A stretch of 64,000 bases of DNA, from positions 62,001-126,000 of the IMG/VR virus record IMGVR_UViG_3300019458_000020; one strand, written 5' to 3'. Positions 1,738 to 50,160 of the stretch are shown in pieces (the stretch's first letter is position 1; the number at the start of each line of letters is the position of its first letter). A model generated the notes under the pieces. That model worked only from the letters and a program-made list of their open reading frames with translations, was not told the origin of the DNA and ran no database searches. Position numbers and translations under genes: made by a program.

Positions 1738-1751
1738 ATTTAACCTTTATT

Positions 1752-2672: not shown

Positions 2673-2742
2673 GAGTTAATTGATTTATATCATCGAATAT
2701 AAATATGACCCACAACGGAGTTTACCAATCAATTGTATTATA

Positions 2743-2922: not shown

Positions 2923-2956
2923 ATTCTTTATATATCATTATTAATGAAATTAGGAT

Positions 2957-3901: not shown

Positions 3902-3906
3902 AAAAA

Positions 3907-4263: not shown

Positions 4264-4264
4264 A

Positions 4265-5298: not shown

Positions 5299-5299
5299 A

Positions 5300-6286: not shown

Positions 6287-7456
6287 TTATCCGATGTAAA
6301 TTGCCATAGGGACACGCTTTAAAGTATCTTGTAAATATTCTGCTTCTCTCGCACGATCTTCTATTTGTTGCTTCTTACCAACGGCTTCCAATGTTTCTCT
6401 TAGTTCAGTAATATACTTTTCTTTTTCCTGTTGAGCTTCATTTCTTAATTCAGCACCATCAAGAGTTACCTCACCGCCAGGAATAGGAATCGTTTGATAC
6501 TTTTGACGAATTGCACCGAGAAGTTCCTTACACAAGGCAAGAAAATATTTTCGAATCCATTGTTTACCCACATCATTAATAGTTCCGTAAGTAATGTTAT
6601 TGTAAGGAATGTTAGAATAATCAGATACATATTGACCGGCCGAACCAGATTGAAATGAACCACTATACCTTTCGTTCTTAACCATGTAATCAAAATAAAC
6701 TCTAAAACCGTCTTGTGGTATTGGAAATATTTTTAGTTTATTATTGACTATTTCAAATGAATAGGCAGACTTACGAACCATATCATTGAATTCGATTGCT
6801 TGACCTCGAAGCAAATCTTCAAAGATTGGAGTCATAAGAAATTGAACTGCTGGGGAATACGCACCGAATCCTAGTTCGTTAAGAACGTTAGAATAACTCA
6901 TACCCGTCATAGAAAACGGGTCATAAATTCTGGCAAAAGCCGGAGTTCTTTCATTAAACACCCTCATGATTTCAATTCGATTGAAACTTTCTGATATATT
7001 TCCCCACAAAGATTGAAGGTCGTAGGTTTGTTGATATGGGACGGTTGTAATGTAACCCCTTTTCCAGTCGGTATTTCCACCTACACCGACTTCGGTTCCG
7101 TATGCCTTCGCTAAATCAACAATGACCGACATTGGTGTTCCTGTTACATTCTGTCCTGAAAGATTTCCAATTTGTTGAATGTTTTGTCCTTGAAATACTT
7201 GAATGTAATTTCTTATATTAAACTGATTTATTTGGGCACCGTATTCATTAACAGCTTCTTCAAAACATGCATAGAAGTTTCTGTCAATCATTTCAATATC
7301 CACGATAGGATGACCCAATCTCAGTGCTGCCCACACCGCAGCACCCATCGCATCCGACTGAAATTCTATGTCGTTATCATAAAAGCCGAATGGGGTGCTG
7401 CCGCTCACGGCAGAACCAGACCCGGGCCACCGTACACGGTCTTGGTCGATTAACAC
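6287..7456 (-). CDS. neck protein (T4 gp13-like)
   Basis: WPGSGS..TPFGFYD, LRLGHPIVDIEM, QWIRKYFLALCKELLG..RQKY..IPIPGGEVTLDG; GTG start preceded by AAGGAGG at 7461-7467. Confidence 0.8.
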   Translation of the reverse strand: MLIDQDRVRWPGSGSAVSGSTPFGFYDNDIEFQSDAMGAAVWAALRLGHPIVDIEMIDRNFYACFEEAVNEYGAQINQFNIRNYIQVFQGQNIQQIGNLSGQNVTGTPMSVIVDLAKAYGTEVGVGGNTDWKRGYITTVPYQQTYDLQSLWGNISESFNRIEIMRVFNERTPAFARIYDPFSMTGMSYSNVLNELGFGAYSPAVQFLMTPIFEDLLRGQAIEFNDMVRKSAYSFEIVNNKLKIFPIPQDGFRVYFDYMVKNERYSGSFQSGSAGQYVSDYSNIPYNNITYGTINDVGKQWIRKYFLALCKELLGAIRQKYQTIPIPGGEVTLDGAELRNEAQQEKEKYITELRETLEAVGKKQQIEDRAREAEYLQDTLKRVPMAIYIG

Positions 7457-8412
7457 GTAACCTCCTTATTATTAGATATATACATAAATTTTTTAATAGG
7501 GAAAGTTTTTAATTTTTTCTTATTCCAGTCTTCCCAATCACGTTCCCACATATAATAAATATGATATCCTAACTGATTAAGTTTATTAAACTTTTCGATT
7601 GTTTTGTTATATAATTCACCAAAAGTCTTTTTACATTTTTTATTAAAATCTTTTGGGTGGTATATTTTGGGATTGCCGTGATAGTAATCACCTAAAAATT
7701 CAAAAATCTTACCCCTCTTTATACCATCAACCTTAAATTTTAGTATTATTTTTTGTCTATTACATGAAGAATCGGGTATTCCTAAAATATCTAAAAATTT
7801 CATTTCTGGTTTGGATATTTGATGACAACAGATTGGACATCCTTTTCCTGATAAATGACCATATACTCTTTGTTTAAAACTACCGTGTAACGGACAAACA
7901 ATTTCTATTTTACTTCTATTATTGATATACATCGACTTAGAATAGTTATATTTTTCTCCATGAACAGACTTGGCAGAAATAATAAACTTATTCAAATTTT
8001 GTTTTAATGTTCCCCCACATTCTGGACACCCACATCCGTTTAAATGGTCGTTTGGAGACTGTAGAAATTCACCGTGTAATTTACAAATAATCGTAACCTT
8101 ATCTCTATTGCGTTTTCCATATTCTACTAAAGAATAATCATATTTGTCTCCATGAAACAATCTAGCCTTTTTTACAAAAGACTCCGTTGTATCACGAAAT
8201 ATTTCCGATAACTTTATATTCCTACAATTGGAACATCCCGACTTTTTAGAACAATGGTTATCCGGAGTCACTAAAAATAAACCATGTTCTTTACATATTA
8301 CTTCAATTTTTGATTTTGCATTTATATAAACCACTTGAGAATAATCATATTTTTCTCTATGAATGTGTTTAGCTCTTTTTATAAAATCGTCTGTAGATAT
8401 CTTCGGTTTCAT
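7450..8412 (-). mobile_element. free-standing homing endonuclease: three Zn-binding repeats plus a C-terminal PD-(D/E)xK/Vsr-like nuclease
   Basis: Three KYDYS...IC..HG.F......H..G.GC..C repeats; FKVDG, FEFLGDYYHG, MWERDW. Confidence 0.8.
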
Positions 8413-8468
8413 CCACAAATAAGTAGTTTATCCCAATCAGTCATAATATTTATTTTTATACTTAAAAT

Positions 8469-10649
8469 ATGCGCTACGAGCTTTCCCAATTAAATGATTT
8501 AGACGACGAGGTAAGAGAAAAGTTGTCGGCTCTTAGTTTAGATACAGGAATGATGAATTCTATAGCGTCGGAACCAACCATTGAACATCGACCAGTTAGT
8601 GTGGCATATACCGAAGCCGGAGAACCTATAGGATGGGCGACGATATTAGAAACTGGACTCAAAACAATTGGTGCAGAAAGAAGAAAATCAGCATATATCG
8701 GAGTTTACGTTCATCAAGATTATCGAAGATTAGGTGTAGGAACAAAATTGGTCAAAGAATTATTTAAATTATTAAAACGAGAATATGAATATATAGTTGT
8801 TTCTCCACATGACGAAAAAAGCCATCACTTCTTTAAAAATCACGACATCGACAGTTGGGAAGACCGCTCAAAATATTTTGATACAGGAAATTACAAACAA
8901 GGATTAATTAAATTAAAAGAAATTATCTATGAATCCAAAGAAAGCTTCTTTGTTTTAGGTAGAGTTTCGGAGGATGGTGAGGTTGACAAATACGAATTTC
9001 GTGACACAATTACAGACGTACACCCGAGTTCTTGGCGTTCCTCTCATTATAAACTGTGGAGATACTGGAATGTCACTAAAATAGTGTATTGGTGGGAATC
9101 TCCAACCGATGTAGAGAAAGAGGGTGTAGAGTATTTCTTGGGTAGAAAAGGGTACGATATTCAAGGAAATAAATACATGATTCACATGACGCCGGATTTT
9201 AACAAATTATCAGGACATAAGGTTATGGAAACTAAATTGAATGAAGGAAAAAAAGAGAAAGCAGCAGAAGATTTCATTAGGAATATTATTAAAGGAACCG
9301 AATGGGAAGGAAAAGTCTTTATTGCTGGTGGATATGTCCGTGATGAATTTATGGGTAAAGATCCAAAGGATTTAGACCTTCTCGTAAATGCACCTAACGG
9401 CGGAATTGAATTTGCAAATTGGATAACCAAGAAAATTGGTGCCCATTCTGACGGCAATCCGGTTACATTCCCCCGATTCGGAACAGCCAAATTCAATCTC
9501 CGTGGAGTAATCCACGATGGTATTGATTTGAGTGGAATGGATATCGAAGCTGTAATGCCAAGAAAAGAACAATATACCGCTGGAAGTAGAAAACCTGATG
9601 TCACCGGTGGAGATTTAAAAGATGATGTTGAAAGACGAGATTTTACTGTTAATTCGCTATTAAAGGATTTAAGTAGTGGAGAAATTTTGGATTTAACTGG
9701 AATGGGTAAAGATGATATTCGTAAGGGAATTGTTAGAACTCCATTAAATCCAGATAAAATTTTTACTGATGATCCTCTTCGAATGTTAAGAGCTGTACGG
9801 TTTGCAATGAAATATAAATGGAAACTTCCGATGTTTATGTTACGTGGATTGAAGAAAAACGCGGAACAACTTAAAAACATTTCTCAAGAAAGAATCAGAG
9901 ATGAATTGGATAAAATGTTAATGACATCGAATCCACATGGAGCCATCAAATTGATGAAAGTAGTAGGATTACTAAAATACGTTATTCCAGAACTACAAGC
10001 TGCAATCAAAATGACTCAGAACGTTCATCATAAAGATGACGTATTCGACCATATTCTTGATGTTCTATCGAAATCGAATCCCGTATTGGTTCAACGATTA
10101 ATGGCCTTATTTCACGATATTGGAAAGACGGTTACAAAGAGTGTAACACCAACAGGTGTTCATTTTTATGGTCATGAGATGGCCGGTGCAGATATGGTTG
10201 AAACCATCATGACACGATTAAAATATCCTAGAGAATTAATTGATGCAGTAAAACTTGGTGTAAGAAACCACATGAGATTAAAATCAGCTGGTGATACAGG
10301 TGTTAATATTTCCGACAAAGCACTTAGAAAGTTTAAGACAGAAATCGGTGACGAACTTGAAAACGTATTAAGTGTTATTCATGCAGATAATATTGCACAC
10401 GCCGATGCATCATCAATGCCTAATCAGATTAATAATCTAAAAAAGAGATTAGATAATCTAAACATGAATGTTTCTGCTCAAGGAAAACCAAAACTTCCTA
10501 TTAGTGGAAAAGACTTACAAGATATAGGTCTAAAACCAGGACCAATATATAGTGAAATTATGAAGGCAGTCACGGAATCTTGGTTCGAAAATCCAAATAT
10601 AACTAAAGAACAAGCTATTCAAATTGCTAAGTCGATGGCAGGAATATGA
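8469..10649 (+). CDS. cca: GNAT + unknown domain + CCA-adding tRNA nucleotidyltransferase with HD domain (fusion or polyprotein)
   Basis: GNAT motif A VHQDYRRLGVGTKL; class II NTase motifs IAGGYVRD, KDLD, ERRDFTVN, DDPLRMLRAVRF, SQERIRDEL; HD domain DVFDH...LFHDIGK. Confidence 0.85.
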   Translation: MRYELSQLNDLDDEVREKLSALSLDTGMMNSIASEPTIEHRPVSVAYTEAGEPIGWATILETGLKTIGAERRKSAYIGVYVHQDYRRLGVGTKLVKELFKLLKREYEYIVVSPHDEKSHHFFKNHDIDSWEDRSKYFDTGNYKQGLIKLKEIIYESKESFFVLGRVSEDGEVDKYEFRDTITDVHPSSWRSSHYKLWRYWNVTKIVYWWESPTDVEKEGVEYFLGRKGYDIQGNKYMIHMTPDFNKLSGHKVMETKLNEGKKEKAAEDFIRNIIKGTEWEGKVFIAGGYVRDEFMGKDPKDLDLLVNAPNGGIEFANWITKKIGAHSDGNPVTFPRFGTAKFNLRGVIHDGIDLSGMDIEAVMPRKEQYTAGSRKPDVTGGDLKDDVERRDFTVNSLLKDLSSGEILDLTGMGKDDIRKGIVRTPLNPDKIFTDDPLRMLRAVRFAMKYKWKLPMFMLRGLKKNAEQLKNISQERIRDELDKMLMTSNPHGAIKLMKVVGLLKYVIPELQAAIKMTQNVHHKDDVFDHILDVLSKSNPVLVQRLMALFHDIGKTVTKSVTPTGVHFYGHEMAGADMVETIMTRLKYPRELIDAVKLGVRNHMRLKSAGDTGVNISDKALRKFKTEIGDELENVLSVIHADNIAHADASSMPNQINNLKKRLDNLNMNVSAQGKPKLPISGKDLQDIGLKPGPIYSEIMKAVTESWFENPNITKEQAIQIAKSMAGI

Positions 10650-11359
10650 TAAAATTAAAATCTCTCATAAAAGAAGACACAGCATCATGGAAAGATATAA
10701 CCATAGATGATGTCGAAAGTTTATTGTCTTCAAGATGGGTAGATAGAGATTATTCATCTACGTTACGAACCATACAGGATTTTTATTACGATGATGATAA
10801 AAGTAAACAACAACTCATTGTGGAATACTTTGAGTTATTAAATTCGGTGGCTAAATTAGTAATTTCATTGACAAGAAATATTCCACATGTAGATGATAAA
10901 TATATAAAAAGATATCTCTTATCTCAGAATGAATTTCATACATCTCCAGAAGAATTTTTTCCTTTTCCTGTATATGTTTCGGCAACTCCTGGTGACGAAG
11001 ATACTATAGGTATAATGATTGATAAGAATGGAAAAGTATTAGAAATACATGAGGGCAACGATGAATCTTCCTCGGAAACAATCAATATGGTAAATAGAAT
11101 GGTCAATCCTTCCGGAAAAAAAGTAAGGATATATGGGTCACACGATACCAGACTTATTCACGATATTGATGAAAAGGGATACCTACCAAAAAATTTGTAT
11201 GTTTCTCCGGATAAAAATCATGCATCAGGGCATTTGGATTTAAAAGGAGAACGGTCGATGTTTTCGGGAATAATAGATATTAACGGAGTGAGTCAAGAAA
11301 GTGATTTGGATTGGAGAACAATGGATAAAATTAAAATTGAAAAGTTTAGATGGATATGA
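10646..11359 (+). CDS. MIKLK-leader protein; C-terminus possibly a degenerate ADP-ribosyltransferase fold
   Basis: MIKLKSLIKE; RIYGSHD...IDEKGYLP..LYVSPD resembles the ART H/G-G-Y/S strand pattern. Confidence 0.5.
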   Translation: MIKLKSLIKEDTASWKDITIDDVESLLSSRWVDRDYSSTLRTIQDFYYDDDKSKQQLIVEYFELLNSVAKLVISLTRNIPHVDDKYIKRYLLSQNEFHTSPEEFFPFPVYVSATPGDEDTIGIMIDKNGKVLEIHEGNDESSSETINMVNRMVNPSGKKVRIYGSHDTRLIHDIDEKGYLPKNLYVSPDKNHASGHLDLKGERSMFSGIIDINGVSQESDLDWRTMDKIKIEKFRWI

Positions 11360-12558
11360 TTAAGTTAAAAAACATTATACAAGAGGTTCACGAATATCAA
11401 CTCGGAGATGTAATAGTCGGATATATTGATGAAGATGGACACATTATTGCATCAGACAAAGTGAAGGGTCATTCGGTATTATTAGATAAACATCCTTCTT
11501 GGGGGTCGAGAAGAACATATCCTTGGAGATTTAATAAAATCATAAATACTTTGTTCTTTTGGTTTGATAACACACCTGAAAGTATAAAAGAAATGGTTGT
11601 AGATTACTTAAATACAAAAAAATTCAAAGTTAAATCTATTACAACAATTGATGATTTTTGGAGCGATGATCCAAGAAGAAAAAGGTCACTATATCATTCT
11701 CATGGTGGGTCCGGAACATTTGACATTTATAAAGATTTTGCAGAAGAAAATATAAAAGAGGCACCAATTGATACATTTCAAACGATAGGTGATTTTTCAA
11801 AGGGGTCATCTTTTACAAGTAAAGCAGATAGAGCATTGGTTACACATCCTGTAGCAGTGCAAAAAGTAAAAGATTTCTTTAAAAACACTACGGCTAATTT
11901 TGATTTTTATTTCGTTAATACTAAGGATGCAAGAAAATTTACCGAAGTTGGTGAAGTTAAGGAAGACTTCATTTATAAAGACCTTAAAATTCAACCATCT
12001 CAACTAAAAGATGGTAAGATAAATAAAGACAACATAACTGTATTTTTTACCAATAATAAGGGTGCCGAGCGTGCTCCACTAACGCCTTGGATAATGGGCC
12101 ATAGATTTGGTCATGTTGTAAGAAATCTATATTCGTGGAAAGAAGAACTCTCTCCTTGGGTAGAAAGACTATCAGAATATATTCTTGAAGATTATGGAAT
12201 CAAAAAAACTCACAAATGGCATAGCCGGGGGTCTTCAGTAAATAGAGAATATCAAATAGCCATGAGACATCTTTATGAAACCATAGGAACATTCAAAAGT
12301 GCCAGAGATAAAAATCTAAGAGATTATTTTGAATTTCATTATGAATTATTTACGCAGTATTTGAAAGATGGTTCGATAAAATTTAATTCTCTTCCTGATG
12401 TATTGATTGTGGGTCACGGATCATACGGTTCTAAAAAACAAAGACGGCTTTTGAATAGAGAATCAGCCGAAGAAAACTTAGATGAATTGTCTCGTGATTA
12501 TCATTATTATGCCGAAAATGTTTTAAGTGATTGTGTCGGGAAAATTTTTGTCATGTAA
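11356..12558 (+). CDS. MIKLK-leader two-domain hypothetical protein
   Basis: MIKLKNIIQE (ATGA overlap with upstream stop); N-terminal domain paralogous to the middle domain of the CCA ORF; internal IKE/APID junction; HRFGH motif. Confidence 0.6.
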   Translation: MIKLKNIIQEVHEYQLGDVIVGYIDEDGHIIASDKVKGHSVLLDKHPSWGSRRTYPWRFNKIINTLFFWFDNTPESIKEMVVDYLNTKKFKVKSITTIDDFWSDDPRRKRSLYHSHGGSGTFDIYKDFAEENIKEAPIDTFQTIGDFSKGSSFTSKADRALVTHPVAVQKVKDFFKNTTANFDFYFVNTKDARKFTEVGEVKEDFIYKDLKIQPSQLKDGKINKDNITVFFTNNKGAERAPLTPWIMGHRFGHVVRNLYSWKEELSPWVERLSEYILEDYGIKKTHKWHSRGSSVNREYQIAMRHLYETIGTFKSARDKNLRDYFEFHYELFTQYLKDGSIKFNSLPDVLIVGHGSYGSKKQRRLLNRESAEENLDELSRDYHYYAENVLSDCVGKIFVM

Positions 12559-12898
12559 TGAAACCAAAGTATGCAAAAACTAAGTGGGGAAGAATACAAT
12601 TTGGATACCACGAAGACACTGAAACCAGTAATTCGGTAAATGAAGGATGGGTTGTTGATAAAGTTACTGCACACTTAGAATGTTGAACCACCTTTTAGGA
12701 GTGGTGGAGTAGGTTTTGGTTTATATATTGCCGGAGCAAAGTGGAGGGCCGAACGGGGATGGTGTTACACGCATCGTCTCTTCAAAGCACTGAAGCAAAA
12801 AATCTTGGGATAGAATGAAAAGGTTGGGATTGCCGGTAAAAGAATATACGCCAAAATTGGATGTAAAAAAAATATGTCCGGATTATAGAGGAAAATAA
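12558..12898 (+). pseudogene. frameshifted GNAT acetyltransferase remnant
   Basis: Segments in successive frames join into a GNAT: MKPKYAKT...VTAHL / NVEPPFRSGGVGFGLY / GMVLHASSLQSTEAKNL / WDRMKRLGLPV...RGK*. Confidence 0.6.
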
Positions 12899-12900
12899 GT

Positions 12901-13305
12901 ATGATTAAACTTAAAACATTAATAACCAAAGACATCAAAAAGAGATATTCTGGAATTGAATTGGACAGTGAATCTCACGATCGATTGAAAGAGAAATTTG
13001 CGAAATACATTCCCGAAGGGTGGAAGGTTATTGCCCATCACATGACCATAGACCCGTCCAAAACTTTACCTGAAGAAGAGATTGGAAAAGAAGCAAAATT
13101 AAAGGTGACTCATATAGGAAAGAATGATAAAGCCATGGCCGTAAAAGTTTCAGGTTATGAAGGTAAAACCAATAACAAGTTTCCTCATGTTACATTGGCT
13201 GTTAATGATAAGGCCGGCGGAAAACCAAAAGATTCCAACGAAATAACGGAGTGGGATGATGTAAAAGAAGATATTTATCTTACGGGTATTATAAATAATC
13301 TATGA
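12901..13305 (+). CDS. 2H phosphoesterase (RNA-repair / cyclic phosphodiesterase type) with MIKLK leader
   Basis: Two HxT motifs: AHHMTID and FPHVTLAVN. Confidence 0.75.
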   Translation: MIKLKTLITKDIKKRYSGIELDSESHDRLKEKFAKYIPEGWKVIAHHMTIDPSKTLPEEEIGKEAKLKVTHIGKNDKAMAVKVSGYEGKTNNKFPHVTLAVNDKAGGKPKDSNEITEWDDVKEDIYLTGIINNL

Positions 13306-13595
13306 TTAAACTAAATCATATAATAAATGAGGATAAACGACTATATCGTGGAGATTGTCGAACGATATTAGGTCAAGATGACTTATTTAATGATGCTACT
13401 CAAATGTCTGGTGCTATAGAAAATAGTGATAAAATAGACTATCATACTTTTGGGAATGAAGCCAATTTAACAGGTGCCCCAAGAATGTTTAAATTGAGAC
13501 TCCGAAGAAATACCGATAAATTTGATTTTGGAAAATATAAAGATTTGGTTTGGGCATACGATACAGAAACAGATATTCATTATTTCTTTTTATGA
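13302..13595 (+). CDS. MIKL-leader hypothetical protein
   Basis: MIKLNHIINE; ATGA overlaps on both sides. Confidence 0.6.
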   Translation: MIKLNHIINEDKRLYRGDCRTILGQDDLFNDATQMSGAIENSDKIDYHTFGNEANLTGAPRMFKLRLRRNTDKFDFGKYKDLVWAYDTETDIHYFFL

Positions 13596-14512
13596 TAAAA
13601 TTGTCAACATTATTAGAAGAAATAGAACAAGAAAAGGTCATTGCTGACAAAGTAAAACAATTGGAAGCAGACTTGGAAGCCCAATTTCCGCAAATTCAAG
13701 ACTTGCATTTATTTATTAAATCCAATGGTTCACTTTATATTCAATCGATTCGGATTAAACCAGAAGAAAGAAGAAAAGGAATAGGAAGTCAAATTATAGA
13801 TAAAATTAAAAAATTTGCTGACGGCCATAACTTAACTATTTCTCTAGCTCCTGAACCGGAGCCAAGATATAAAGAAAAACTTCACAAATTTTATAAGAGA
13901 CATGGATTCATTTTTAATAAAGGAAGACATAAAGATTGGCAATTATCAGAACCATTTTCATCTACAATGTATCGAAGACCCCAAAAGGAAGCTATGGATA
14001 CCTCTACTGTAATATCTTCACCAATGATACAACAATCGTTTGATCGTTCTTTCCTGAATTACATGAAAAATGTGGAAAATGGAATTCTTAAAGGATATGA
14101 TAGGAGTAAAAATCTGTGGTTTCCACACGAGTCTTATGAAGGCGGGCTTCCAACAATAGGGTATGGCCATAAGATAAAAACCAAAAACGAATTAAATAGA
14201 ATGAATCGTGGAGTAACCGATTCAGAAATAAATAGGATGTTGACACAAGATTTGGAAACTGCTAAAAAATCTGTCGAAGACTATATTGAAAAAAGATATA
14301 AAGTAAAGCTAATGTTGGAAAAAAATCAACAAGAAATGTTAGTTGATTTTGCATTCCATTTAGGTAGTCTTGATAAGTTCCCTGAATTTACTGAGGCTGT
14401 ATTAAAAAAAGATTGGAATACAGTAAAAAAAGAATATAAACGGCATGCTCGTGGAAAAGAGTTGACTGGTAGAAATGACTCGTTTTACCAACGATACCTT
14501 AAAAATTTATGA
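13592..14512 (+). CDS. GNAT + phage lysozyme (GH24-like) fusion with MIKL leader
   Basis: Likely start ATG 13592 (MIKLSTLLEE); IKPEERRKGIGSQII, KFYKRHGF (GNAT); KNVENG, PTIGYGHK, MLVDFAFHLG (lysozyme). Confidence 0.75.
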   Translation: MIKLSTLLEEIEQEKVIADKVKQLEADLEAQFPQIQDLHLFIKSNGSLYIQSIRIKPEERRKGIGSQIIDKIKKFADGHNLTISLAPEPEPRYKEKLHKFYKRHGFIFNKGRHKDWQLSEPFSSTMYRRPQKEAMDTSTVISSPMIQQSFDRSFLNYMKNVENGILKGYDRSKNLWFPHESYEGGLPTIGYGHKIKTKNELNRMNRGVTDSEINRMLTQDLETAKKSVEDYIEKRYKVKLMLEKNQQEMLVDFAFHLGSLDKFPEFTEAVLKKDWNTVKKEYKRHARGKELTGRNDSFYQRYLKNL

Positions 14513-15045
14513 TACACATTGCAAAATTAGTAACCGAAAAACGAAGTGAATCTTCCATAGATAAAGGATGTTTAATGGCTGATGTATCTCCTGAAATTTG
14601 TAAAAAGTTGGTAGAATTCGGGAAGAAAATTATTCCCGAATCCGATTTATATGTAGAGGGAGACGAGTTTGGAAGAGAATTAGAATGTCATATAACCGTT
14701 TTGTATGGTTTTACTAGAAACCTGACCGAATTAGAAGTTCGTAGAATAATAAACGGTGTAAAACCATTTACTATTAAACTTTCCGGTCTTAGTAAGTTTA
14801 CTCCACCTGAAAAATTTGAAGTAGTAAAGTTTGATGTAGAAAGTGAAATTCTTACTTCCTTAAATAAAAAATGTCAAGAACTTCCTTTTGAAAGTGATTT
14901 TCCAGATTATCATCCCCACTTGACTATAGCATACGTAAAAAAGGGAAAATTCAATCACACCAAAGAAGGATTATCTATAGAAATACCAATTAATAGATTT
15001 ACATATTCAACCGCCACAAAAGAAAAAACCTACTATAATTTATGA
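14509..15045 (+). CDS. 2H phosphoesterase, T4 gp57B/Acb1-like (putative anti-CBASS nuclease)
   Basis: GCLMA, GRELECHITVLYG and DYHPHLTIAYVKKG; leader MIHIAKLVTE. Confidence 0.75.
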   Translation: MIHIAKLVTEKRSESSIDKGCLMADVSPEICKKLVEFGKKIIPESDLYVEGDEFGRELECHITVLYGFTRNLTELEVRRIINGVKPFTIKLSGLSKFTPPEKFEVVKFDVESEILTSLNKKCQELPFESDFPDYHPHLTIAYVKKGKFNHTKEGLSIEIPINRFTYSTATKEKTYYNL

Positions 15046-15452
15046 TACTACTAAAAAATATAGTAGAAGATATTGAAGGCCCAATACCAGACGTGTTGTA
15101 TCATGCAACATTTAACGCATTAATTCCGTCTATATACAAAAAAGGAATAGTACCGTGTGGAGTAAAATATCAGAATTTTGAAGGATGTGAACGTGGTGTT
15201 TACATTTCCGATGATTACGGGTTTGCTGGAAGTATGATTGAAGGTGGGTCGGAAAATGAAGATATACCAGATGAGTGGTTCGATGAAATCGTAGTAATTA
15301 TTATAGACCCACAGAAAATTGATATGTCTAAATTAGAAAAAGACCCACATATTAATTTATCTGCCACGGAGGATGAAATAATTCCAAGGTCGTTTATTTA
15401 TAGGGGAATCATACCGTCGAATTCGTTTATTGAAGTCGTTGATTATCGTTAA
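15042..15452 (+). CDS. ADP-ribosyltransferase-fold protein (Tpt1/KptA-like) with leader
   Basis: LYHATF...SIYKKGIVP...GVYISDD...FIYRGIIP; leader MILLKNIVE. Confidence 0.65.
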   Translation: MILLKNIVEDIEGPIPDVLYHATFNALIPSIYKKGIVPCGVKYQNFEGCERGVYISDDYGFAGSMIEGGSENEDIPDEWFDEIVVIIIDPQKIDMSKLEKDPHINLSATEDEIIPRSFIYRGIIPSNSFIEVVDYR

Positions 15453-26058: not shown

Positions 26059-26064
26059 ATGAAG

Positions 26065-26679: not shown

Positions 26680-28395
26680 TTAGACTTGGTCCAAATCAGC
26701 AATCAACACACGGCCATAAAATTCCGGCCTTACCATCTTCTTGGCATAACGTGTCATTACGCCCCGGCGGGGAGTAAAGTTCACCGGGTCATAGACCAAC
26801 GGCGTTTGCACCAATGGAATATAAGGAGCGTAAACAGCACCAGTTTCGAGGAAGTTATTTCCACGGAAACCGACGAGGATTACGTTATCCGTCATGTATG
26901 GGTTCTTGTAAACTTGGAATCGGGACGCGAACGTTCCGACACGGCTTACACCCATTGCGAACTTGGCTTGGTCGCCATCCGTGCTGACCACGTATCCAGG
27001 GATGGATTCGAGAATCGTAGCAACGTCTGGGGAACAAACGAGGAAGTTAGCACCACCACGAAGAGTCAATTGGTGAATCCTGTTGGATACCTTTTGAATC
27101 TTGTTACCGAGGGTTTGATACCAAGTTGACTTGGTGTAGTAACCACCGGTTCCAGCAGTCGTTTGATCAACAGCTTGGAAGGTACCACCGACACGAACGA
27201 TTTCACGGTTGAGGCGTGCGCTCCAACGTTCAGTCGTTACAGCTGGTGCATTCGTCAATAGCATGTCGAGGATTTCGAGGTCGATTTCCATCGAGACGTA
27301 TTCAGACAATAATGCAGTCAATTCTGCTTCTGCGTCGATGCTGTGGTAAGCATTCAAGTCTTGAGCGAGCTCAGGGGTCCAAGCAGCTTTCAACTTACGA
27401 GTCTTAGCAACGATAGGTTCGCTCTTGAGTTCGAGGTTGACTTCAGGAATACCGATGTCTTTGTTAAGACCAGTATCCGTAGCAGTCGTCGAAGCACCAA
27501 GATTGTCTTCAAAGTCGCCACGAGCATTATCACGAGGTTGTACCGAGTAGGTGATAGCAAGACCACCGACTGAACCTGTCGTTGAGAATGGGTTCGTTGT
27601 GGTCGAGGCCGATACAACGAATACAACTTCCGAACCGTTAACTTTCGTCAAGGCTGGGAACCAGGTTCCAATGCTTGAACCAGAAACGGTGAACGAGCGA
27701 ACACCGTTAAGATCGATTGGATTACCAGCAGCCAACGATGCCGAGTAAAGGTTTGTGGTAGTAATCTTGTAAAGATGACCAGCAGCCAACGATGCCGAAA
27801 TGACTACCATTTCAGGTGAGGCGTTACCAGTATTCCAGTTGATATCTTCGGCCGAAGCAGAAGCTACCGTGCTGGAGACGCTAGGAGCACCCTTGTCGTT
27901 GATAGAATATCCGAAGCGACCAGCGCCATAAAGACCGCCGGTTGCCGAATCAGTAGAACCGAGCTTGGTGCCCGTACCACCGAACAACGAAGAATAGACA
28001 GAACCACCGAGCGAGCCCGTGGTATCTCTCTGGAACAAACCTTGGGTCGTACCATACTTGAAGTCCAAGTAGAATACCAATCCGGAAGGAAGGTTCATAG
28101 GTTGAACGGAGACGAACTCCTTAGCAGCGAATTCTGCGAATACACGACGAACGAGTGGGAGAGCTACGCCTGCCCATTGTTCGCTGTTTGCCGAAGTACC
28201 AGTGTTGGTAACTTCATCAATGAGTTGCTTTGCTTGGTTTTCAAGCAAAACAGCCATGTTCGACTTTTCAATGTCGTTTTTCAATCCATCGAGAAGACCG
28301 GTTTTGTCCCAACGGGTCACAAGACCACGGGTTTCTTGCATCAGTCTAGCTTGTGGATTGAGAGTATTGGTTAACAGTTGTTTAACGTTTTCCAT
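26680..28395 (-). CDS. gp23: major capsid protein (T4 gp23 family)
   Basis: LLENQ, LPLVRRVF, VSVQPMNLPSGLVFYLDF, AKTRKLKAAWTPELAQDLNAYHSIDAEAEL, VYAPYIPL, FTPRRGVMTRY. Confidence 0.97.
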   Translation of the reverse strand: MENVKQLLTNTLNPQARLMQETRGLVTRWDKTGLLDGLKNDIEKSNMAVLLENQAKQLIDEVTNTGTSANSEQWAGVALPLVRRVFAEFAAKEFVSVQPMNLPSGLVFYLDFKYGTTQGLFQRDTTGSLGGSVYSSLFGGTGTKLGSTDSATGGLYGAGRFGYSINDKGAPSVSSTVASASAEDINWNTGNASPEMVVISASLAAGHLYKITTTNLYSASLAAGNPIDLNGVRSFTVSGSSIGTWFPALTKVNGSEVVFVVSASTTTNPFSTTGSVGGLAITYSVQPRDNARGDFEDNLGASTTATDTGLNKDIGIPEVNLELKSEPIVAKTRKLKAAWTPELAQDLNAYHSIDAEAELTALLSEYVSMEIDLEILDMLLTNAPAVTTERWSARLNREIVRVGGTFQAVDQTTAGTGGYYTKSTWYQTLGNKIQKVSNRIHQLTLRGGANFLVCSPDVATILESIPGYVVSTDGDQAKFAMGVSRVGTFASRFQVYKNPYMTDNVILVGFRGNNFLETGAVYAPYIPLVQTPLVYDPVNFTPRRGVMTRYAKKMVRPEFYGRVLIADLDQV

Positions 28396-40342: not shown

Positions 40343-41380
40343 TTAGATGGTGTAATCAATCGGTTCTTGGGGTTTAGAATTGACTACTTGGGAAGATAAT
40401 TTTCTTATACGAGAAAGATTCTTAATGATGATTCGGAGTTTTGTAAAAATGTCATGAAAGTCATTTTTGATTGGGTATTTTCCAACTTTATCTTTTATAA
40501 GATTGACAATTTCTCCGATATCCTTGTTTGAGATGTCTATTCCTAACGCATGTGCCGTATTTCTTAAAACCTTTATAATAGGATTATACGTAGTATTTAA
40601 GAAGGATTGTAACATTCTAGCAATCGTCTGTTTCTCTTCGTCTGTTAAATTGGCTATAGTCTTAGGAAGAACAATTCTTGGTGTTTCTTCTCCGATATTT
40701 AAATCTTCCAATGATGCTTTAAGATCAGCTGGCAAATGGTCTAAAACGATCTTTAGATTTTTATTTTTACTCGAAATTAAATTATCAAAATAAGACTTCA
40801 AATATTTTCCCATTTTGAGAACATCTTCCGAAGGTTGTTGCACATTGGATTTTGGCATACCTGCTGGAGCTGATGGTTTTGGAGAATTCATCTGATTGAT
40901 GTATGTGATTACATCATCATAGTCTTTATAGAAATCGGTTAATGCCTGTAATCCATTATTAGTTAATTCGATTTCAGGATGATATCCATTCTGTTTTAAT
41001 TTTATGGCAGCCTTGGTAGGGTCATCCTTTATACCAAAATAATCAAGAATTTCTTGAGTTGCGTTTTGCCACTCTTTAGAAAGTTGATTGGCGAATTTAG
41101 AAACGTTTGCGTCTTTCCAATCGGTATGAATTTCTTTAGCTTTCTTTTTAATGTCATCAAACCAACCTTCGTATAAGGATTCGGTTATATGAATCTGTTT
41201 TAAAATATTATCAACCACCGACTCAAGAGGACGATATTCTGGTTTTGATTTGATGTATTTTTGAAGCTTCTGTAGAATATCAATTTTTTTGCGGTTGTAT
41301 TTATTAATAATCTGTGTTACAACCACATCTTCATGTTGAACTTCTTGAAGTCTTGCCTTCATTTTATTCCATGTTTCCAA
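40343..41380 (-). CDS. hypothetical helical protein (possible internal head protein)
   Basis: Overlaps the protease gene end; RLQE and SLYE/GWFD are candidate cleavage sites. Confidence 0.55.
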   Translation of the reverse strand: METWNKMKARLQEVQHEDVVVTQIINKYNRKKIDILQKLQKYIKSKPEYRPLESVVDNILKQIHITESLYEGWFDDIKKKAKEIHTDWKDANVSKFANQLSKEWQNATQEILDYFGIKDDPTKAAIKLKQNGYHPEIELTNNGLQALTDFYKDYDDVITYINQMNSPKPSAPAGMPKSNVQQPSEDVLKMGKYLKSYFDNLISSKNKNLKIVLDHLPADLKASLEDLNIGEETPRIVLPKTIANLTDEEKQTIARMLQSFLNTTYNPIIKVLRNTAHALGIDISNKDIGEIVNLIKDKVGKYPIKNDFHDIFTKLRIIIKNLSRIRKLSSQVVNSKPQEPIDYTI

Positions 41381-41990
41381 GAATGTCTCGAATGATGGTT
41401 TCGGTCTTTTCCCATTTTCCGGTTATAGGATTCTTAACTTGACTGACTCCTTCATTCAGACTTCCTTCTGGATACAGAAATGCACCACGAGTAGATGGAT
41501 TAGAAACGAAATCAAAAGCAATAAGTTCAAAATCAGGTTGAACTACATCCACATCTTCAGACATGTTTTTCTTAACCGTTCCAAGTCCACGACTGGAAAT
41601 ACCTAATCTAATATTTGAACGGAAGAGTTCTTTTAAGATGTTTCCATTGGGTGTAGGTAATACTTCTACAGTTCCAACCAAATCATCATTTTCCCAATGC
41701 ATTTCAACAATGTTATGAGAAACGTTTTGAAGATTGACAACGGAAGATTCTGGATGGTCTAATTCTCCTAATGCTCTACGTTCTTTAATAAAATTCTCTT
41801 CATATTTTCCTGCTTCACGAAGAAGAATTTCACGAGTATAAACACGACCGTTTTGATTTTTCTTTCCGGCACGTTGTAGAACACCTTTGACGATCAATCT
41901 TCGGTTCATGTCGCCTGCGGCTTGTTCAAAGAGGGTATCTCTTACGAAATCGAATGGGATACAATCTACTAATAGTCTCTTATCATTCAT
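41364..41990 (-). CDS. gp21: prohead protease (T4 gp21 family)
   Basis: KGVLQRA..KNQNGRVY, ALGELDHP, NVSH, TPNGNIL, GISSRGLG, FDFVSNPSTRGA. Confidence 0.95.
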   Translation of the reverse strand: MNDKRLLVDCIPFDFVRDTLFEQAAGDMNRRLIVKGVLQRAGKKNQNGRVYTREILLREAGKYEENFIKERRALGELDHPESSVVNLQNVSHNIVEMHWENDDLVGTVEVLPTPNGNILKELFRSNIRLGISSRGLGTVKKNMSEDVDVVQPDFELIAFDFVSNPSTRGAFLYPEGSLNEGVSQVKNPITGKWEKTETIIRDILGNME

Positions 41991-42997
41991 ACAAGTTCCT
42001 TTGTAATAGTAAAGAGATAATTTCTACCAATAGATTCTATTTCTACAATATTTTTAGATGGTTGATTGTGATTTCTTAATCCATTGACTAGATTCAACTT
42101 CATCTCTTTTAAATCGACATTGTTTTTGAATTCTTTCTTTGGTATTTCCATGATGAATTCCAATACTCTATTTTTTGATTCGTTGACGGATGTTTTTGGT
42201 CCCTTTATAAAAGGAGATAAATTTAATGATTCATTTACTAAGAATTCTTCCAAAGCCAATTTCAATTCTTTTATAGTTTTGGTTTTTTTTGATTCTCCGA
42301 GTTTTTTATTCTCTTCATCATCCGGATTTTCTTGACCAGGCAATTCAGCAGGCTTCTTTACAGCAACTGCTGCAGTTGATGGTTCTGGTTCTGGTTCCGG
42401 TGCCGGCGAGGGTGGTGTCGGTTCGTCAGGAGATTGTGTTTGTGCCGGAGCCGGTGCTGGTGATGGTTCAGGACCTTCTGGCTTCGATGGTGCAGCTGAA
42501 GGAACAGGAGATTCTGGTTTATCAGGTTGTTCGGGAGCACCAGCAGCCTCTATTTTAATATTTACACCCGGTGTTAGAAAGTATTCTTTTCCATTTGCGT
42601 CGCTTAGTACCACAACATTTTTGTTGTAATACCAATCAACACTGGCTTTGGATACATTATCAATAGTATAATCTTTTTGTGGTTGTCCATATCCACGAGA
42701 AGCATTGACGGTTACTTTTTTACCTACAACTGATGCATTCATTTTATCTAAGAATTTTTTCTTGGCATCAGCTTTTGCTTTATTTACACTATCTTCAAAT
42801 TCTTTAAAATCCTTTGTGAAATCATAATCACCAGTACCAGCCGCAGCTGGTTCTGGAGCGGCAGAAGTTGGGTCAGGAGTTGGTGTAGTCTTTGCTGCAA
42901 CTACAGCCGTATCTTGTGCAGGTGGAACCGTTTCTCCTTCAGGAGAAGGGGTCGGTGATGCTTCTTGAATCTTGATTAAGTTTTTTAATCTTATCAT
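41987..42997 (-). CDS. MIRLK-leader Pro/Ala-rich head-associated protein
   Basis: Likely start 42997 (MIRLKNLIKIQE); ASRGYGQPQKDY core; P/A/E-rich linkers. Confidence 0.6.
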   Translation of the reverse strand: MIRLKNLIKIQEASPTPSPEGETVPPAQDTAVVAAKTTPTPDPTSAAPEPAAAGTGDYDFTKDFKEFEDSVNKAKADAKKKFLDKMNASVVGKKVTVNASRGYGQPQKDYTIDNVSKASVDWYYNKNVVVLSDANGKEYFLTPGVNIKIEAAGAPEQPDKPESPVPSAAPSKPEGPEPSPAPAPAQTQSPDEPTPPSPAPEPEPEPSTAAVAVKKPAELPGQENPDDEENKKLGESKKTKTIKELKLALEEFLVNESLNLSPFIKGPKTSVNESKNRVLEFIMEIPKKEFKNNVDLKEMKLNLVNGLRNHNQPSKNIVEIESIGRNYLFTITKELV

Positions 42998-49203: not shown

Positions 49204-50160
49204 TTAATATTCTATTGCACCAATCATCATATACCACTCGTCGCCATATTTATCTAAATTTTTACGAACCGTGGATGGTCTATATTTCACCCACTTTTCA
49301 TTCATTTGTTGATAAATATAAACCCATTGTATGTGATTTGGTAATATAGTTCCGCTATATCCGAACTTACCCAGTTCTTTAGACAATGACAGTGGTTTCA
49401 TTTCGGATGTATCGTCTTCTGACCTATCAGATGGGTGGTCATAATATTTTTGATGTTTAGATGTTATTTCTGCATCATAATCAGGAGCAATCAAACTTTT
49501 ATCTGGTATAGAAATTTGGAGGATTACTTGTCCTCCGCCGTGGTTATGGACTGCTTGAGACGAATAAAATTTTGATTGGTCAAATCTAGCGGCAAAGAAA
49601 ATTTCGTTATAGTGTTCAACTCCCCTGTCACCAAAATTTCCTCCTGTCTGTGCAGGCCTCAATCCCTTTTTCAAAATTCCATCAAGAAATTCTGTACTAG
49701 TTCCATGAAACCCAATAGACGGAACTTCTCCTGTTATCTTTTTCTTGGCCAAATTAATTGTTTCGGAATCCTCATCATCACTTTTACTAACTTGTTTTAT
49801 TCCCAAATCTTTTACAATTTTCCTGATGATAATAGACGTAGATGGATTTGATTTATCAATACCATGAACGAATAATCTTTTATTTTTTTTGTCTAAATCG
49901 CCGGTTACTACATCCGGAGGAAGTTCTCCGGAAAGACTTACAATATCATAAACACTTTCAGCAGACTCTAGTGATTCTTTGGAATATTTACTCTTTTGAA
50001 TATATGGATGTTGACGTAGGTGGGCCTTCAACTCCGATATATCACTGTCAGTATCCAAGATAAACAATTTGTCTTTCCAAACGACAACAACGGAGTGTTC
50101 TTTTCCGGTCGTCAAGTCTTTGACAATGTATTCTTGTAATAATGACTTCAAACGTATCAT
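49204..50160 (-). CDS. MIRLK-leader protein with ADP-ribosyltransferase-like domain
   Basis: Likely start 50160 (MIRLKSLLQE); GFHGTS...ILKKGLRP...IFFAA...YSGTILP. Confidence 0.65.
   Translation of the reverse strand: MIRLKSLLQEYIVKDLTTGKEHSVVVVWKDKLFILDTDSDISELKAHLRQHPYIQKSKYSKESLESAESVYDIVSLSGELPPDVVTGDLDKKNKRLFVHGIDKSNPSTSIIIRKIVKDLGIKQVSKSDDEDSETINLAKKKITGEVPSIGFHGTSTEFLDGILKKGLRPAQTGGNFGDRGVEHYNEIFFAARFDQSKFYSSQAVHNHGGGQVILQISIPDKSLIAPDYDAEITSKHQKYYDHPSDRSEDDTSEMKPLSLSKELGKFGYSGTILPNHIQWVYIYQQMNEKWVKYRPSTVRKNLDKYGDEWYMMIGAIEY

What the first reader, a model, noticed from the sequence alone, without database searches (positions are those of the whole stretch)
8469..12558. Cargo ORFs look like gp21-processed polyproteins assembled from shuffled modules
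Seen: the CCA ORF is GNAT (aa 1-~145), then an internal leader LIKLKEIIYE (8904-8933), domain X, then KLNE/GKKE and the CCA-HD enzyme. Domain X (LGRVSEDG...HPSSW...WRYW...IVYWW...EKEGVEYFL..KGY) is paralogous to the N-terminal domain of 11356 (VGYIDEDG...HPSW...WRFN...LFFW...IKEMVVDYL..KKF), which ends at IKE/APID. The 13592 ORF joins GNAT and lysozyme at QKE/AMD. Inference: one leader carries several enzymes that are released in the head by cleavage after Glu. The internal leader records a gene fusion.
Basis: partly seen in the sequence, partly recalled or inferred. Interest (0 to 1): 0.62.

Follow-up and report, generated by a model that had tools for sequence, protein, structure and literature searches.

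The report
Capsid-cargo genes built from leader-tagged modules
A large uncultured T4-type phage has about a dozen genes that begin with the same ten-residue head-packaging tag, and several are fusions of independent enzyme modules joined exactly at the tag's protease-cutting site. This suggests, but does not prove, that the head protease cuts them apart again inside the capsid.

Summary

- **Modules.** The 8469 ORF is GNAT, then an internal leader (8904-8933), domain X, and a CCA-adding/HD enzyme. The 11356 ORF is leader, an X paralogue, and a C-domain. The 13592 ORF is leader, GNAT, and lysozyme.
- **Phage type.** The 251-kb phage has a gp23-type capsid protein and a gp21-type (S77) prohead protease. 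Eleven ORFs start with M-I-K-L-K-x-L-[IL]-x-E, which has the length and key positions (4, 7, 8, 10) of T4's capsid targeting sequence.
- **Relatives.** Each module also occurs alone, directly behind such a leader. The fusion joints fall on the leader's terminal Glu.
- **Joint census.** 21 of 22 independently detected internal joints keep [LIV]xE; random positions give about 3. The one exception is this window's own PQKE/AMD joint.
- **Motif depletion.** [LI]xE is specifically depleted inside leader-tagged proteins.
- **Domain X.** It is a widespread family without a Pfam entry. It occurs alone, in tandem, and fused.

Module shuffling and the fusion origin of the internal leader are therefore shown. 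Cleavage at the joints is a well-supported inference with no proteomic evidence. Packaging of the 8469 product is uncertain because its leader is internal. I rate this a new variant of T4 internal-protein and polyvalent-protein biology.

The parts
8469..8903 (+). GNAT1 module (aa 1-145) of the 726-aa ORF; no N-terminal leader
   Evidence: Pfam PF00583 at aa 40-123, E 2.9e-11. It is 31% identical to the GNAT at the start of the L003 and L010 CCA fusions.
8904..8933 (+). internal leader LIKLKEIIYE (aa 146-155), ending in I-Y-E
   Evidence: PSSM score 15.4 bits, third-best non-start position in the genome. It is N-terminal in the L022 orthologue. AF2 predicts a helix at 141-154.
8934..9245 (+). 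domain X (aa 156-259); its tail VMETKLNE is a decayed second leader ending L-N-E
   Evidence: The AF2 model of X has pLDDT 81, and its last ~20 residues are disordered.
9246..10649 (+). class II CCA-adding enzyme with HD domain (aa 260-726)
   Evidence: PF01743, PF12627 and PF01966; phrog_2244, E 9e-58. pLDDT jumps from 43 to 90 at about aa 260. Homologues start here.
10646..11359 (+). leader-tagged cargo ORF (237 aa), function unknown
   Evidence: Leader MIKLKSLIKE. No Pfam or PHROG hit. Only weak ART-fold leads.
11356..11385 (+). N-terminal leader MIKLKNIIQE of the 400-aa ORF
   Evidence: 25.4 bits.
11386..11760 (+). domain X paralogue (aa 11-135), ending N-I-K-E
11761..12558 (+). C-domain of unknown function (aa 136-400)
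   Evidence: In L022 (7743) and L025 (5989) this domain stands directly behind a leader. The leader's terminal Glu aligns with E135.
13592..13990 (+). leader plus GNAT2 module (aa 1-133), ending P-Q-K-E
   Evidence: PF13508 and PF00583 at aa 46-107. The same module is fused to other partners in L022, L023, L011 and L004, with INE or LNE at its end.
13991..14512 (+). lysozyme module (aa 134-306)
   Evidence: PF00959 at aa 184-293. It is a stand-alone leader-lysozyme gene of about 185 aa in L022, L003, L008, L010 and L011.
12901..13305 (+). leader-tagged 2H/CPD-like phosphoesterase; position 10 of the leader is K, not E
   Evidence: PF08302, E 1.9e-5. The L022 orthologue has E10.
13302..13595 (+). 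leader-tagged 97-aa cargo ORF, function unknown
14509..15045 (+). leader-tagged 2H phosphoesterase (LigT/Acb1-like)
   Evidence: PF13563, E 1.5e-10; PF23474, E 5e-7.
15042..15452 (+). leader-tagged module Y (ART/Tpt1-like); fused behind GNAT2 in L022
23006..25108 (-). 700-aa leader-tagged ORF: module Y, a middle part, an internal leader-like VIQLKNLLGRNVAE (23534-23575), and a C-module
   Evidence: In G002 only residues 525-700 match, preceded there by L-Q-E/G.
41364..41990 (-). gp21-type prohead serine protease (Peptidase_S77)
   Evidence: PF03420, 80 bits against a cut-off of 27.
41987..42997 (-). leader-tagged Pro/Ala/Glu-rich protein just upstream of the protease (scaffold or core candidate)
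49204..50160 (-). leader-tagged PARP-type ADP-ribosyltransferase (analogue of T4 Alt)
   Evidence: PF00644, E 1.2e-6, 28.6 bits against a cut-off of 26.7.
26680..28395 (-). gp23-type major capsid protein; I-D-E61/V lies at the position aligned with the T4-type maturation cut

Best explanation
The window belongs to a 251-kb uncultured phage with a T4-type head: a gp23-like capsid protein and a gp21-like S77 prohead protease. Eleven of its genes, all in this window, encode proteins that start with a ten-residue peptide M-I-K-L-K-x-L-[IL]-x-E. I read this as the phage's capsid targeting sequence, a tag that docks a protein to the prohead core and is then removed by the prohead protease after the Glu.

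The cargo behind the tag is a cassette set. It includes a CCA-adding enzyme, two 2H phosphoesterases, GNATs, a lysozyme, PARP/Tpt1-like ADP-ribosyltransferase folds, domain X, and unknowns.

The flagged ORFs arose by head-to-tail joining of such tagged genes. Each joint is what remains of the downstream gene's leader. The targeting half of that leader decays while the processing half ([LIV]-x-E, then a small residue) is kept. The most likely consequence is that the protease cuts at these joints inside the prohead, so the modules are released as separate proteins and ejected with the DNA.

Shown: the tag family, the modules, the fusion history, conservation of the joints, and presence of the protease.

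Inferred: packaging, cleavage, ejection, and the role of the cargo (early tRNA/RNA repair and counter-defence).
For: 1. Head type. The MCP is 54% identical to gp23-type proteins of Flavobacterium phage immuto and Microcystis phage Mel-JY01. The S77 protease lies at 41364-41990.
2. Leader. There are 11 N-terminal copies in this genome and none outside the window, and 65 distinct copies in 23 related loci. M1, I2, L4, [LI]7, [LIV]8 and E10 are near-invariant. In T4 the first 10 residues of IPIII suffice for packaging; residues 4 and 7 act in targeting and 8 and 10 in processing (PMC9026906). Codons vary synonymously, so the signal is a peptide and not a DNA element. A leader-tagged protein sits next to the protease gene.
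3. Protease specificity. At the position aligned with the T4-type gp23 cut (L-T-E/A), this MCP has I-D-E/V, and relatives have V-S-E/A and I-S-E/A.
4. Joints match leader ends.
   - Stand-alone CCA genes read leader-E/G[AV]KE. Fused ones keep M-x-E-I-K-Q-L-I-x-E/G or shorter remnants, and this window has L-N-E/G.
   - E259 and G260 are at least 90% conserved.
   - The o11356 C-domain stands behind a leader in L022 and L025.
   - Lysozyme and GNAT2 are separate tagged genes in L022, where GNAT2 is fused to module Y instead.
5. Census. 21 of 22 automatically found internal joints have [LIV]xE within 4 residues, and 12 have it at offset 0. Random positions give a mean of 3.0 and a maximum of 10 in 5000 trials.
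6. Differential decay. Hydrophobicity at leader positions 4 and 7 drops to about 45% at the joints, while P3 and P1 persist.
7. Motif depletion. [LI]xE has O/E 0.93 in tagged proteins against 1.21 in other ORFs, while [LI]xD and [LI]xK are enriched in both.
8. Accessibility. The joints lie in low-confidence or disordered segments.
Against: - There are no protein-level data, so nothing shows that any of these proteins is in a virion or is cut.
- The 8469 product has no N-terminal leader. In T4 the tag has only been shown to work at the N-terminus. L010's GNAT-CCA fusion has no intact leader at all, so some fusions may have left the packaging pathway.
- The PQKE/AMD joint lacks the P3 hydrophobic residue.
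- The motif at a joint is inherited from the leader, so its presence alone could be a fossil.
- For joints not at offset 0, the Glu was picked by the motif, which makes the P3 figure partly circular.
- X is often attached to nucleotidyltransferases, so it could be a working accessory domain that should stay attached.
- The [LI]xE depletion is modest (rate ratio 0.77, about 3 sd).
Confidence: 0.6

Rival explanations
1. The fusions are stable multidomain enzymes. The N-terminal leader, where present, is removed, but the internal joints are not cut. The [LIV]xE remnants are fossils of the fusion events or just flexible linkers, and the modules work together, for example X as a substrate-binding or regulatory domain of the CCA enzyme.
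For: - X occurs in tandem behind nucleotidyltransferase domains and next to CCA enzymes in many proteins.
- GNAT1 recurs with CCA across different middle modules, which hints at functional coupling.
- The PQKE joint lacks the motif.
- N4 vRNAP-type polyvalent proteins are packaged unprocessed (PMC5512222).
Against: - The processing residues persist at 21 of 22 joints while the rest of the leader decays.
- The same module is found with many different partners, which argues against obligate cooperation.
- [LI]xE is depleted elsewhere in these proteins.
Confidence: 0.25
2. The modules are made separately by internal translation starts rather than by proteolysis. The Met kept in many internal leaders (M-x-E-I-K-Q-L-I-x-E; VMETKLNE here) serves as a second start codon, so a tagged downstream protein is produced alongside the long form.
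For: - Met is retained in the internal leaders of L003, L004, L008 and L023 and at aa 253 here.
- T4 gene 21 itself has a functional internal start (PMC9026906).
Against: - The main internal leader here starts with TTA (Leu), which is not a start codon.
- Several joints have no Met at all: IKE/A here, and VIKE/S, NIKE/S and TLSE/A in relatives.
- This reading does not explain why E and P3 are the best-kept residues.
Confidence: 0.07
3. The shared N-terminal peptide is not a capsid-targeting and processing signal. It serves something else, such as a translation-initiation context, a degradation or localisation tag, or a recombination hotspot for gene cassettes.
For: - No experiment links this peptide to the capsid.
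- Most tagged genes overlap the preceding stop (ATGA), which is consistent with translational coupling.
Against: - Conservation is at the peptide level, with synonymous codon variation.
- The length and the positions 4, 7, 8 and 10 match the mapped T4 signal.
- The tag occurs only in the structural-gene region, including next to the protease.
- The MCP carries the same motif at the homologous maturation site.
- An Alt-like ADP-ribosyltransferase carries the tag, as in T4.
Confidence: 0.06

Closest known systems
T4 capsid targeting sequence and internal proteins (IPI-III, Alt), processed by gp21
   Same: - A ten-residue N-terminal tag with key hydrophobic residues at 4, 7 and 8 and Glu at 10.
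- Cutting after Glu in an [LI]xE context by an S77 prohead protease.
- Highly variable cargo behind a conserved tag, including an ADP-ribosyltransferase.
- The MCP is matured at the same motif.
   Different: - The repertoire is far larger and enzymatic: a CCA-adding enzyme, 2H phosphoesterases, GNATs and a lysozyme.
- Cargo genes are fused into multi-module ORFs with internal tags. To my knowledge this is not described for T4.
- The sequence of the tag differs.
- Nothing here has been tested experimentally.
Polyvalent proteins of phages and conjugative elements (Iyer et al. 2017, PMC5512222)
   Same: - Disparate conflict-related domains (ART, GNAT, 2H, lysozyme, Pol-beta NTase) are combined in one polypeptide encoded among late genes.
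- They are proposed to be delivered with the DNA and split into units.
- The 13592 product hits a 3925-position PHROG profile of such a giant protein.
   Different: - Those proteins are predicted to be processed by an embedded metallopeptidase. No peptidase domain is detected in these ORFs, and the joints carry the motif of the trans-acting prohead protease.
- These ORFs are much smaller (306-726 aa).
- The modules also exist as single tagged genes.
Long propeptides and multiply cleaved ejection proteins of giant phages (SPN3US gp53/54, phiKZ inner-body proteins)
   Same: - A gp21-related protease cuts after Glu at a three-residue motif.
- N-terminal pieces of more than 100 residues are removed by several cuts (PMC5694885, PMC10052503).
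- Domain X (105-125 aa between two sites) could behave like such a propeptide.
   Different: - The motif there is AxE or [SAG]xE, not [LIV]xE.
- Those propeptides are not known as free-standing, shuffled modules or as enzymes.
Viral polyproteins cut by a viral protease (RNA viruses)
   Same: One ORF, several functional units, and short conserved cleavage motifs at the unit borders.
   Different: Unrelated proteases and domains. Here the cutting would occur inside an assembling capsid, and each unit is also encoded separately in sister genomes.

Membership tests
T4-type capsid targeting sequence (CTS) cargo | Short (about 10 aa) N-terminal propeptide with hydrophobic residues at positions 4, 7 and 8 and Glu at 10 | tested here: met
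   65 distinct leaders: L4 in 61/65, [LIM]7 in 65/65, [LIVM]8 in 65/65 and E10 by definition of the set. In this genome 8 of 11 have E10. T4 mapping is from PMC9026906.
T4-type capsid targeting sequence (CTS) cargo | The phage encodes a gp21-type (S77) prohead protease and a gp23-type capsid protein | tested here: met
   PF03420 at 80 bits; gp23-type MCP.
T4-type capsid targeting sequence (CTS) cargo | The same cleavage motif is used at the capsid protein's maturation site | tested here: met
   I-D-E61/V aligns with L-T-E/A of a T4-type MCP. This is an alignment only; the cut is not observed.
T4-type capsid targeting sequence (CTS) cargo | The protein is found inside the head with the tag removed | not testable with these tools
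   Needs virion proteomics. No paper on a relative's proteome was found.
Polyvalent proteins (Iyer et al. 2017) | Several unrelated conflict-type domains in one polypeptide encoded among virion genes | tested here: met
   GNAT+X+CCA/HD and GNAT+lysozyme. The neighbours are adaptor, capsid and protease genes.
Polyvalent proteins (Iyer et al. 2017) | Embedded peptidase (MPTase or other) for self-processing | tested here: not met
   No peptidase family was found in the three ORFs by Pfam or PHROGs. There is only a weak feature-based lead to a BSP peptidase for the 11356 C-domain.
Class II CCA-adding enzyme with HD domain | PolyA_pol head domain, RNA-binding domain and HD domain in order | tested here: met
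   PF01743 (68.7 bits), PF12627 (57.5 bits) and PF01966 (29.4 bits), all above their cut-offs.
GNAT acetyltransferases | Acetyltransferase_1/7 profile above the gathering score | tested here: met
   44.1 bits (8469 ORF) and 34.0 bits (13592 ORF).
Phage lysozyme (PF00959) | Profile match above the gathering score | tested here: met
   43.8 bits against a cut-off of 22.3, aa 184-293 of the 13592 ORF.
Gelsolin/ADF-H fold (for domain X) | Significant structural match | tested here: inconclusive
   Best Foldseek E 0.016 with TM 0.38-0.48, and best Z 4.8, below the level the tool calls meaningful.

The most novel reading that the evidence does not exclude
A broad clade of large uncultured phages uses a T4-like targeting tag as a universal cassette adaptor. 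The clade includes this 251-kb cave phage, related IMG/VR contigs, the cultured Microcystis phage Mel-JY01 and, with variant tags, 480-735-kb 'huge' phages. Dozens of enzyme modules are tagged, freely recombined at the tag, strung into polyproteins, cut apart again by the prohead protease and injected with the DNA. This would give the phage a pre-made tRNA/RNA-repair and counter-defence kit that acts before any phage gene is expressed: a CCA-adding enzyme, 2H phosphoesterases, Tpt1/PARP-like transferases and GNATs.
Probability: 0.4. Interest if true: 0.8.

Novelty: new variant of a known kind. Interest (0 to 1): 0.65.

Why it matters
If the joints are cut, phage heads can be loaded with polyproteins that a structural protease turns into several free enzymes. 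That would be a combinatorial way to evolve and deliver injected proteins, which T4 research has hinted at but not shown.

It would also place a CCA-adding enzyme and RNA-end-healing enzymes among injected proteins. That points to tRNA damage as a defence the phage must meet within seconds of entry.

Practically, the ten-residue tag plus [LIV]xE joints give a simple sequence rule for predicting the injected proteome of many uncultured large phages. They also offer a design for packing several foreign proteins into one capsid.

Tried and rejected
- **No close DNA or protein relatives in some searches.**
  - Megablast of the region against cultured phages found nothing.
  - tblastn of the 11356 ORF against phages found nothing.
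  - The search for related loci with the single 13592 and 25108 proteins found nothing by exact peptide words. Relatives were then found by tblastn in loci already fetched and by a genome search.
- **Fold of domain X.** Foldseek and VIA-align gave only weak gelsolin/ADF-H-like rows. I do not assign a fold or function.
- **AF2 of the whole 726-aa ORF.** Confidence was low for aa 108-258 because the alignment was shallow there. It was useful only for the sharp start of the CCA domain.
- **Atlas look-ups** for the 10646 ORF and the 11356 C-domain gave only weak leads, ART-like and BSP-peptidase-like. They are not used as evidence.
- **Maribacter phage Molly.** Its 2H homologue has no leader.
- **Literature.** No paper mentions this leader or Mel-JY01. 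The phiKZ proteolysis paper PMC3323674 is not held.
- **Assembly-error explanation** for the fusions is rejected (and recurrent architectures).
- **DNA-level repeat explanation** for the leaders is rejected.

Full report
**What the window is.** The window is bases 62001-126000 of a 250,813-bp IMG/VR virus record. Contigs of two cave-metagenome runs carry the studied stretch. The phage has a gp23-type major capsid protein (26680-28395, minus strand). It is 54% identical to the capsid proteins of Flavobacterium phage immuto, Microcystis phage Mel-JY01 and the 484-kb uncultured phage LR756508, and about 24% identical to T4-type phages. It also has a gp21-type prohead serine protease, Peptidase_S77, at 41364-41990 on the minus strand (80 bits, cut-off 27).

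**The leader.**
- Eleven ORFs start with M-I-[KR]-L-[KS]-x-[LI]-[ILV]-x-E. They begin at 10646, 11356, 12901, 13302, 13592, 14509 and 15042 on the plus strand, and at 23006, 25108, 42997 and 50160 on the minus strand. A twelfth possible copy, offset by two residues, starts at 6283 on the minus strand.
- None lies outside the window in the 251-kb record.
- In 23 related IMG/VR loci I found 65 further distinct leaders of the same form in front of unrelated proteins.
- The codons vary synonymously (ATA/ATT, AAA/AAG, TTA/CTT/CTA/TTG, GAA/GAG). The conserved thing is therefore a peptide, not a DNA element.
- For T4 IPIII, the first 10 residues suffice for packaging. Residues 4 and 7 matter for targeting and residues 8 and 10 for processing, and Asp at 10 blocks processing (PMC9026906). 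The invariant positions here are 1, 2, 4, 7, 8 and 10.
- The capsid protein has I-D-E61/V at the position that aligns with the L-T-E/A maturation site of a T4-type capsid protein. The two closest cultured relatives have V-S-E/A and I-S-E/A.
- One tagged protein lies directly upstream of the protease gene. Another is a PARP-type ADP-ribosyltransferase (PF00644, E 1.2e-6), the counterpart of T4 Alt.
- I take the leader to be this clade's capsid targeting sequence, and [LIV]-x-E to be the protease's site. Both are inferences from homology of the system, not observations.

**Check of the observation.**
- The 8469 ORF (726 aa) has GNAT at aa 40-125, the nucleotidyltransferase head at 283-423, the RNA-binding domain at 461-512 and HD at 543-607.
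- The internal LIKLKEIIYE is at 8904-8933. Its first codon is TTA.
- A position matrix built from the eleven N-terminal leaders, without the Met, scores it 15.4 bits. Of 96,186 positions in all ORFs of the genome, only one other non-start position scores higher.
- With the leaders removed, domain X against the N-domain of the 11356 ORF gives E=3e-7.
- The 13592 ORF has GNAT at 46-107 and lysozyme at 184-293.
- Two Logan assemblies carry window 8300-13700 without a single difference. They may be the source samples, so this only rules out a one-off assembly error.

**Relatives show the modules and the joints**.

Contig L022 is syntenic: it has the same adaptor and HNH genes upstream, and its CCA part is 81% identical. 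It differs from this window as follows.
- It has leader-X-CCA with no GNAT (589 aa). The internal leader of the window is therefore a former N-terminal leader.
- It has the leader fused directly to the 11356 C-domain with no X (282 aa). Its leader Glu aligns with E135 here.
- It has a stand-alone leader-lysozyme (185 aa).
- Its GNAT2 is fused to module Y (the 15042 type) instead of to lysozyme.

Other relatives add to this.
- L025 also has the 11356 C-domain directly behind a leader.
- Seven loci (L013-L019) have the CCA enzyme directly behind a leader, reading leader-E/G-[AL]-K-E.
- In fused versions, the sequence in front of the CCA domain is a complete or decayed leader. L003, L004, L008 and L023 have M-x-E-I-K-Q-L-I-x-E/G. 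L020 has I-L-E/G, L010 has L-M-S-E/G, L022 has M-L-N-E/G, and this window has V-M-E-T-K-L-N-E/G.
- E259 and G260 are at least 90% conserved among 13 homologues.
- In the 735-kb phage LR756501 the CCA domain ends a 1233-aa ORF. That ORF has a variant leader (M-I-T-K-F-K-L-F-E), a deaminase-like part, and domains separated by [LV]-N-E sites. M-L-N-E/A precedes the CCA part.

**Census of joints.** I took the mature parts of 67 distinct tagged ORFs and asked where their first residues align inside other ORFs at position 100 or later.
- This gave 22 distinct joints.
- 21 have [LIV]xE within four residues of the extrapolated border, and 12 have it exactly at the border.
- Random positions in the same proteins give a mean of 3.0 of 22 and a maximum of 10 in 5000 trials.
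- The single exception is the window's own GNAT2-lysozyme joint, P-Q-K-E/A. The Glu is there and aligns with a Glu of stand-alone lysozymes, but P3 is Gln.
- The same GNAT2 module in L023, L004, L011 and L022 ends in I-N-E or L-N-E.
- At the joints the residues corresponding to leader positions 4 and 7 are hydrophobic in only about 45% of cases, while P3 and P1 persist and P1' is G, S or A in 18 of 21.
- Caveat: for joints not at offset 0, I placed the Glu by the motif. The P3 figure is therefore partly circular, and the offset-0 subset is the clean evidence.
- A second internal leader in the window, in the 700-aa ORF at 23006-25108, behaves the same way. In a complete 365-kb relative only residues 525-700 match, and they are preceded there by L-Q-E/G.

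**An independent signal.** In tagged proteins (15,967 residues) [LI]xE occurs 140 times against about 151 expected from shuffles (O/E 0.93). In other ORFs of at least 200 aa the O/E is 1.21. [LI]xD (1.27 against 1.13) and [LI]xK (1.29 against 1.11) are enriched in both sets. The rate ratio of 0.77 is about three standard errors from 1. This fits selection against stray protease sites in proteins that meet the protease. It is modest evidence.

**Structure.**
- In the AF2 model of the whole ORF, confidence jumps from 43 to 90 at about residue 260, and a helix covers 141-154.
- X modelled on a 41-sequence alignment has pLDDT 81 (four strands, a helix, a strand). Its last 20 residues, which carry the L-N-E site, are disordered.

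**Domain X.**
- A profile of X finds 108 representatives at E<=1e-3, from 75 to 2745 aa long.
- About a third are stand-alone proteins of 100-150 aa, several with the same leader.
- Others have X in tandem behind nucleotidyltransferase-like domains, or at either end of GNAT2-containing proteins.
- None has a Pfam family.
- Structure searches give only weak gelsolin/ADF-H-like rows.
- In fusions X typically ends in H-G-L-x-E. Its function is open: it could be a pro-domain, an RNA-binding aid or a core-binding piece.

**How it most likely works.**
- Tagged genes sit head to tail, often with overlapping stop and start (ATGA).
- Loss of a stop and start, or recombination within the shared leader, joins two of them. 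The downstream leader becomes a linker that still carries the protease site.
- The product is docked to the prohead core by the remaining intact leader and is cut at the leader and the joints. The pieces then leave with the DNA.
- For the 11356 ORF this is straightforward. The 13592 ORF also has an N-terminal leader, but its joint is atypical.
- For the 8469 ORF it requires an internal tag to work in targeting, which has not been tested in any phage. Otherwise this protein is a cytoplasmic three-domain enzyme.
- The cargo list is a CCA-adding enzyme, two 2H phosphoesterases (one Acb1-like), PARP/Tpt1-like folds, GNATs and a lysozyme. Nearby genes include RlaP and NADAR. Together these suggest early repair of tRNA and RNA ends, removal of signalling nucleotides and host modification. 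That is inference from family names only.

**Comparison with what is known.**
- The tag system works like T4's CTS and internal proteins, and it passes every sequence-level membership test I could apply.
- The multi-module ORFs resemble the polyvalent proteins of Iyer et al. (PMC5512222) in domain vocabulary and proposed logic. They fail one defining feature, an embedded peptidase, and instead carry sites for the trans-acting prohead protease.
- Long, multiply cut propeptides are known in SPN3US (PMC5694885, PMC10052503).
- I found no paper describing this leader or tag-delimited cargo polyproteins.
- I rate it a new variant of a known kind.

**Verdict.** Modular shuffling and the fusion origin of the internal leader are shown. 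Processing at the joints is probable (about 0.6) but unproven. One of the three cited joints is atypical, and the first ORF's route into the capsid is uncertain.

Noticed in passing
window 12559-12900: The 'intergenic' gap is the decayed remnant of a gene that is intact in the syntenic relative L022 (8593-9276, 227 aa, no leader). Pieces match in three frames, residues about 39-156 are missing, and there is a stop.
   Followed up: partly
window 23006-25108 (-): This 700-aa leader-tagged ORF has an ART-like module Y at the N-terminus, a DGGHR motif that looks ParB-like by eye (no Pfam hit), an internal leader-like stretch at 23534-23575, and a Cys/His-rich C-module. In a 365-kb relative the C-module is joined to different upstream parts.
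   Followed up: partly
window 49204-50160 (-), 15042-15452 (+), 10646-11359 (+): There are several leader-tagged ADP-ribosyltransferase-like proteins. One has a PARP catalytic-domain hit above threshold, module Y is related to it, and there is a weak ART-fold lead for the 237-aa ORF. These are counterparts of T4 Alt.
   Followed up: partly
window 12901-12930: The leader of the CPD-like 2H protein has Lys instead of Glu at position 10, whereas the L022 orthologue has Glu. In T4 a change at position 10 blocks processing but not targeting, so this protein may be packaged uncut.
   Followed up: no
L002 (LR756501.1, 735-kb phage), locus 1724-5425: This 1233-aa ORF has a variant leader (MITKFKLFE), a deaminase-like part, several small domains separated by repeated D-P-Y-G-E-E-D-W linkers and [LV]-N-E sites, and a C-terminal CCA enzyme. 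Neighbouring ORFs share the variant leader. LR756508 uses M-K-L-K-x-L-L-x-E.
   Followed up: partly
L032 (Microcystis phage Mel-JY01, PP395634.1 60276-62718): A cultured phage carries three paralogous ORFs with the same MIKLKSLLxE-type leader, plus a truncated copy. This gives an experimental handle on the tag.
   Followed up: partly
window 25164-25991, 33358-33876, 34541-35662, 35650-36522 (all -): These ORFs are an ATP-grasp (R2K), a NADAR, an RlaP RNA-repair nucleotidyltransferase and a TnsA/NUMOD3 homing-endonuclease-like ORF. They are further RNA-repair and ADP-ribose-related genes without the leader.
   Followed up: no
window 26001-30000: G+C is 0.45 here against about 0.34 elsewhere. 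The stretch coincides with the capsid protein gene and the 471-aa ORF next to it.
   Followed up: no
window 7450-8418 (-): An HNH/endonuclease-like ORF (phrog_681, E 2e-42) sits between the head-tail adaptor gene and the cargo cluster. It is conserved in the same place in L022.
   Followed up: no
window 11761-12558: The C-domain of the 11356 ORF has a G-H-R-F-G-H stretch and a weak feature-based lead to a plant/bacterial BSP peptidase family (score 0.88). If real, it would be a peptidase among the cargo.
   Followed up: no
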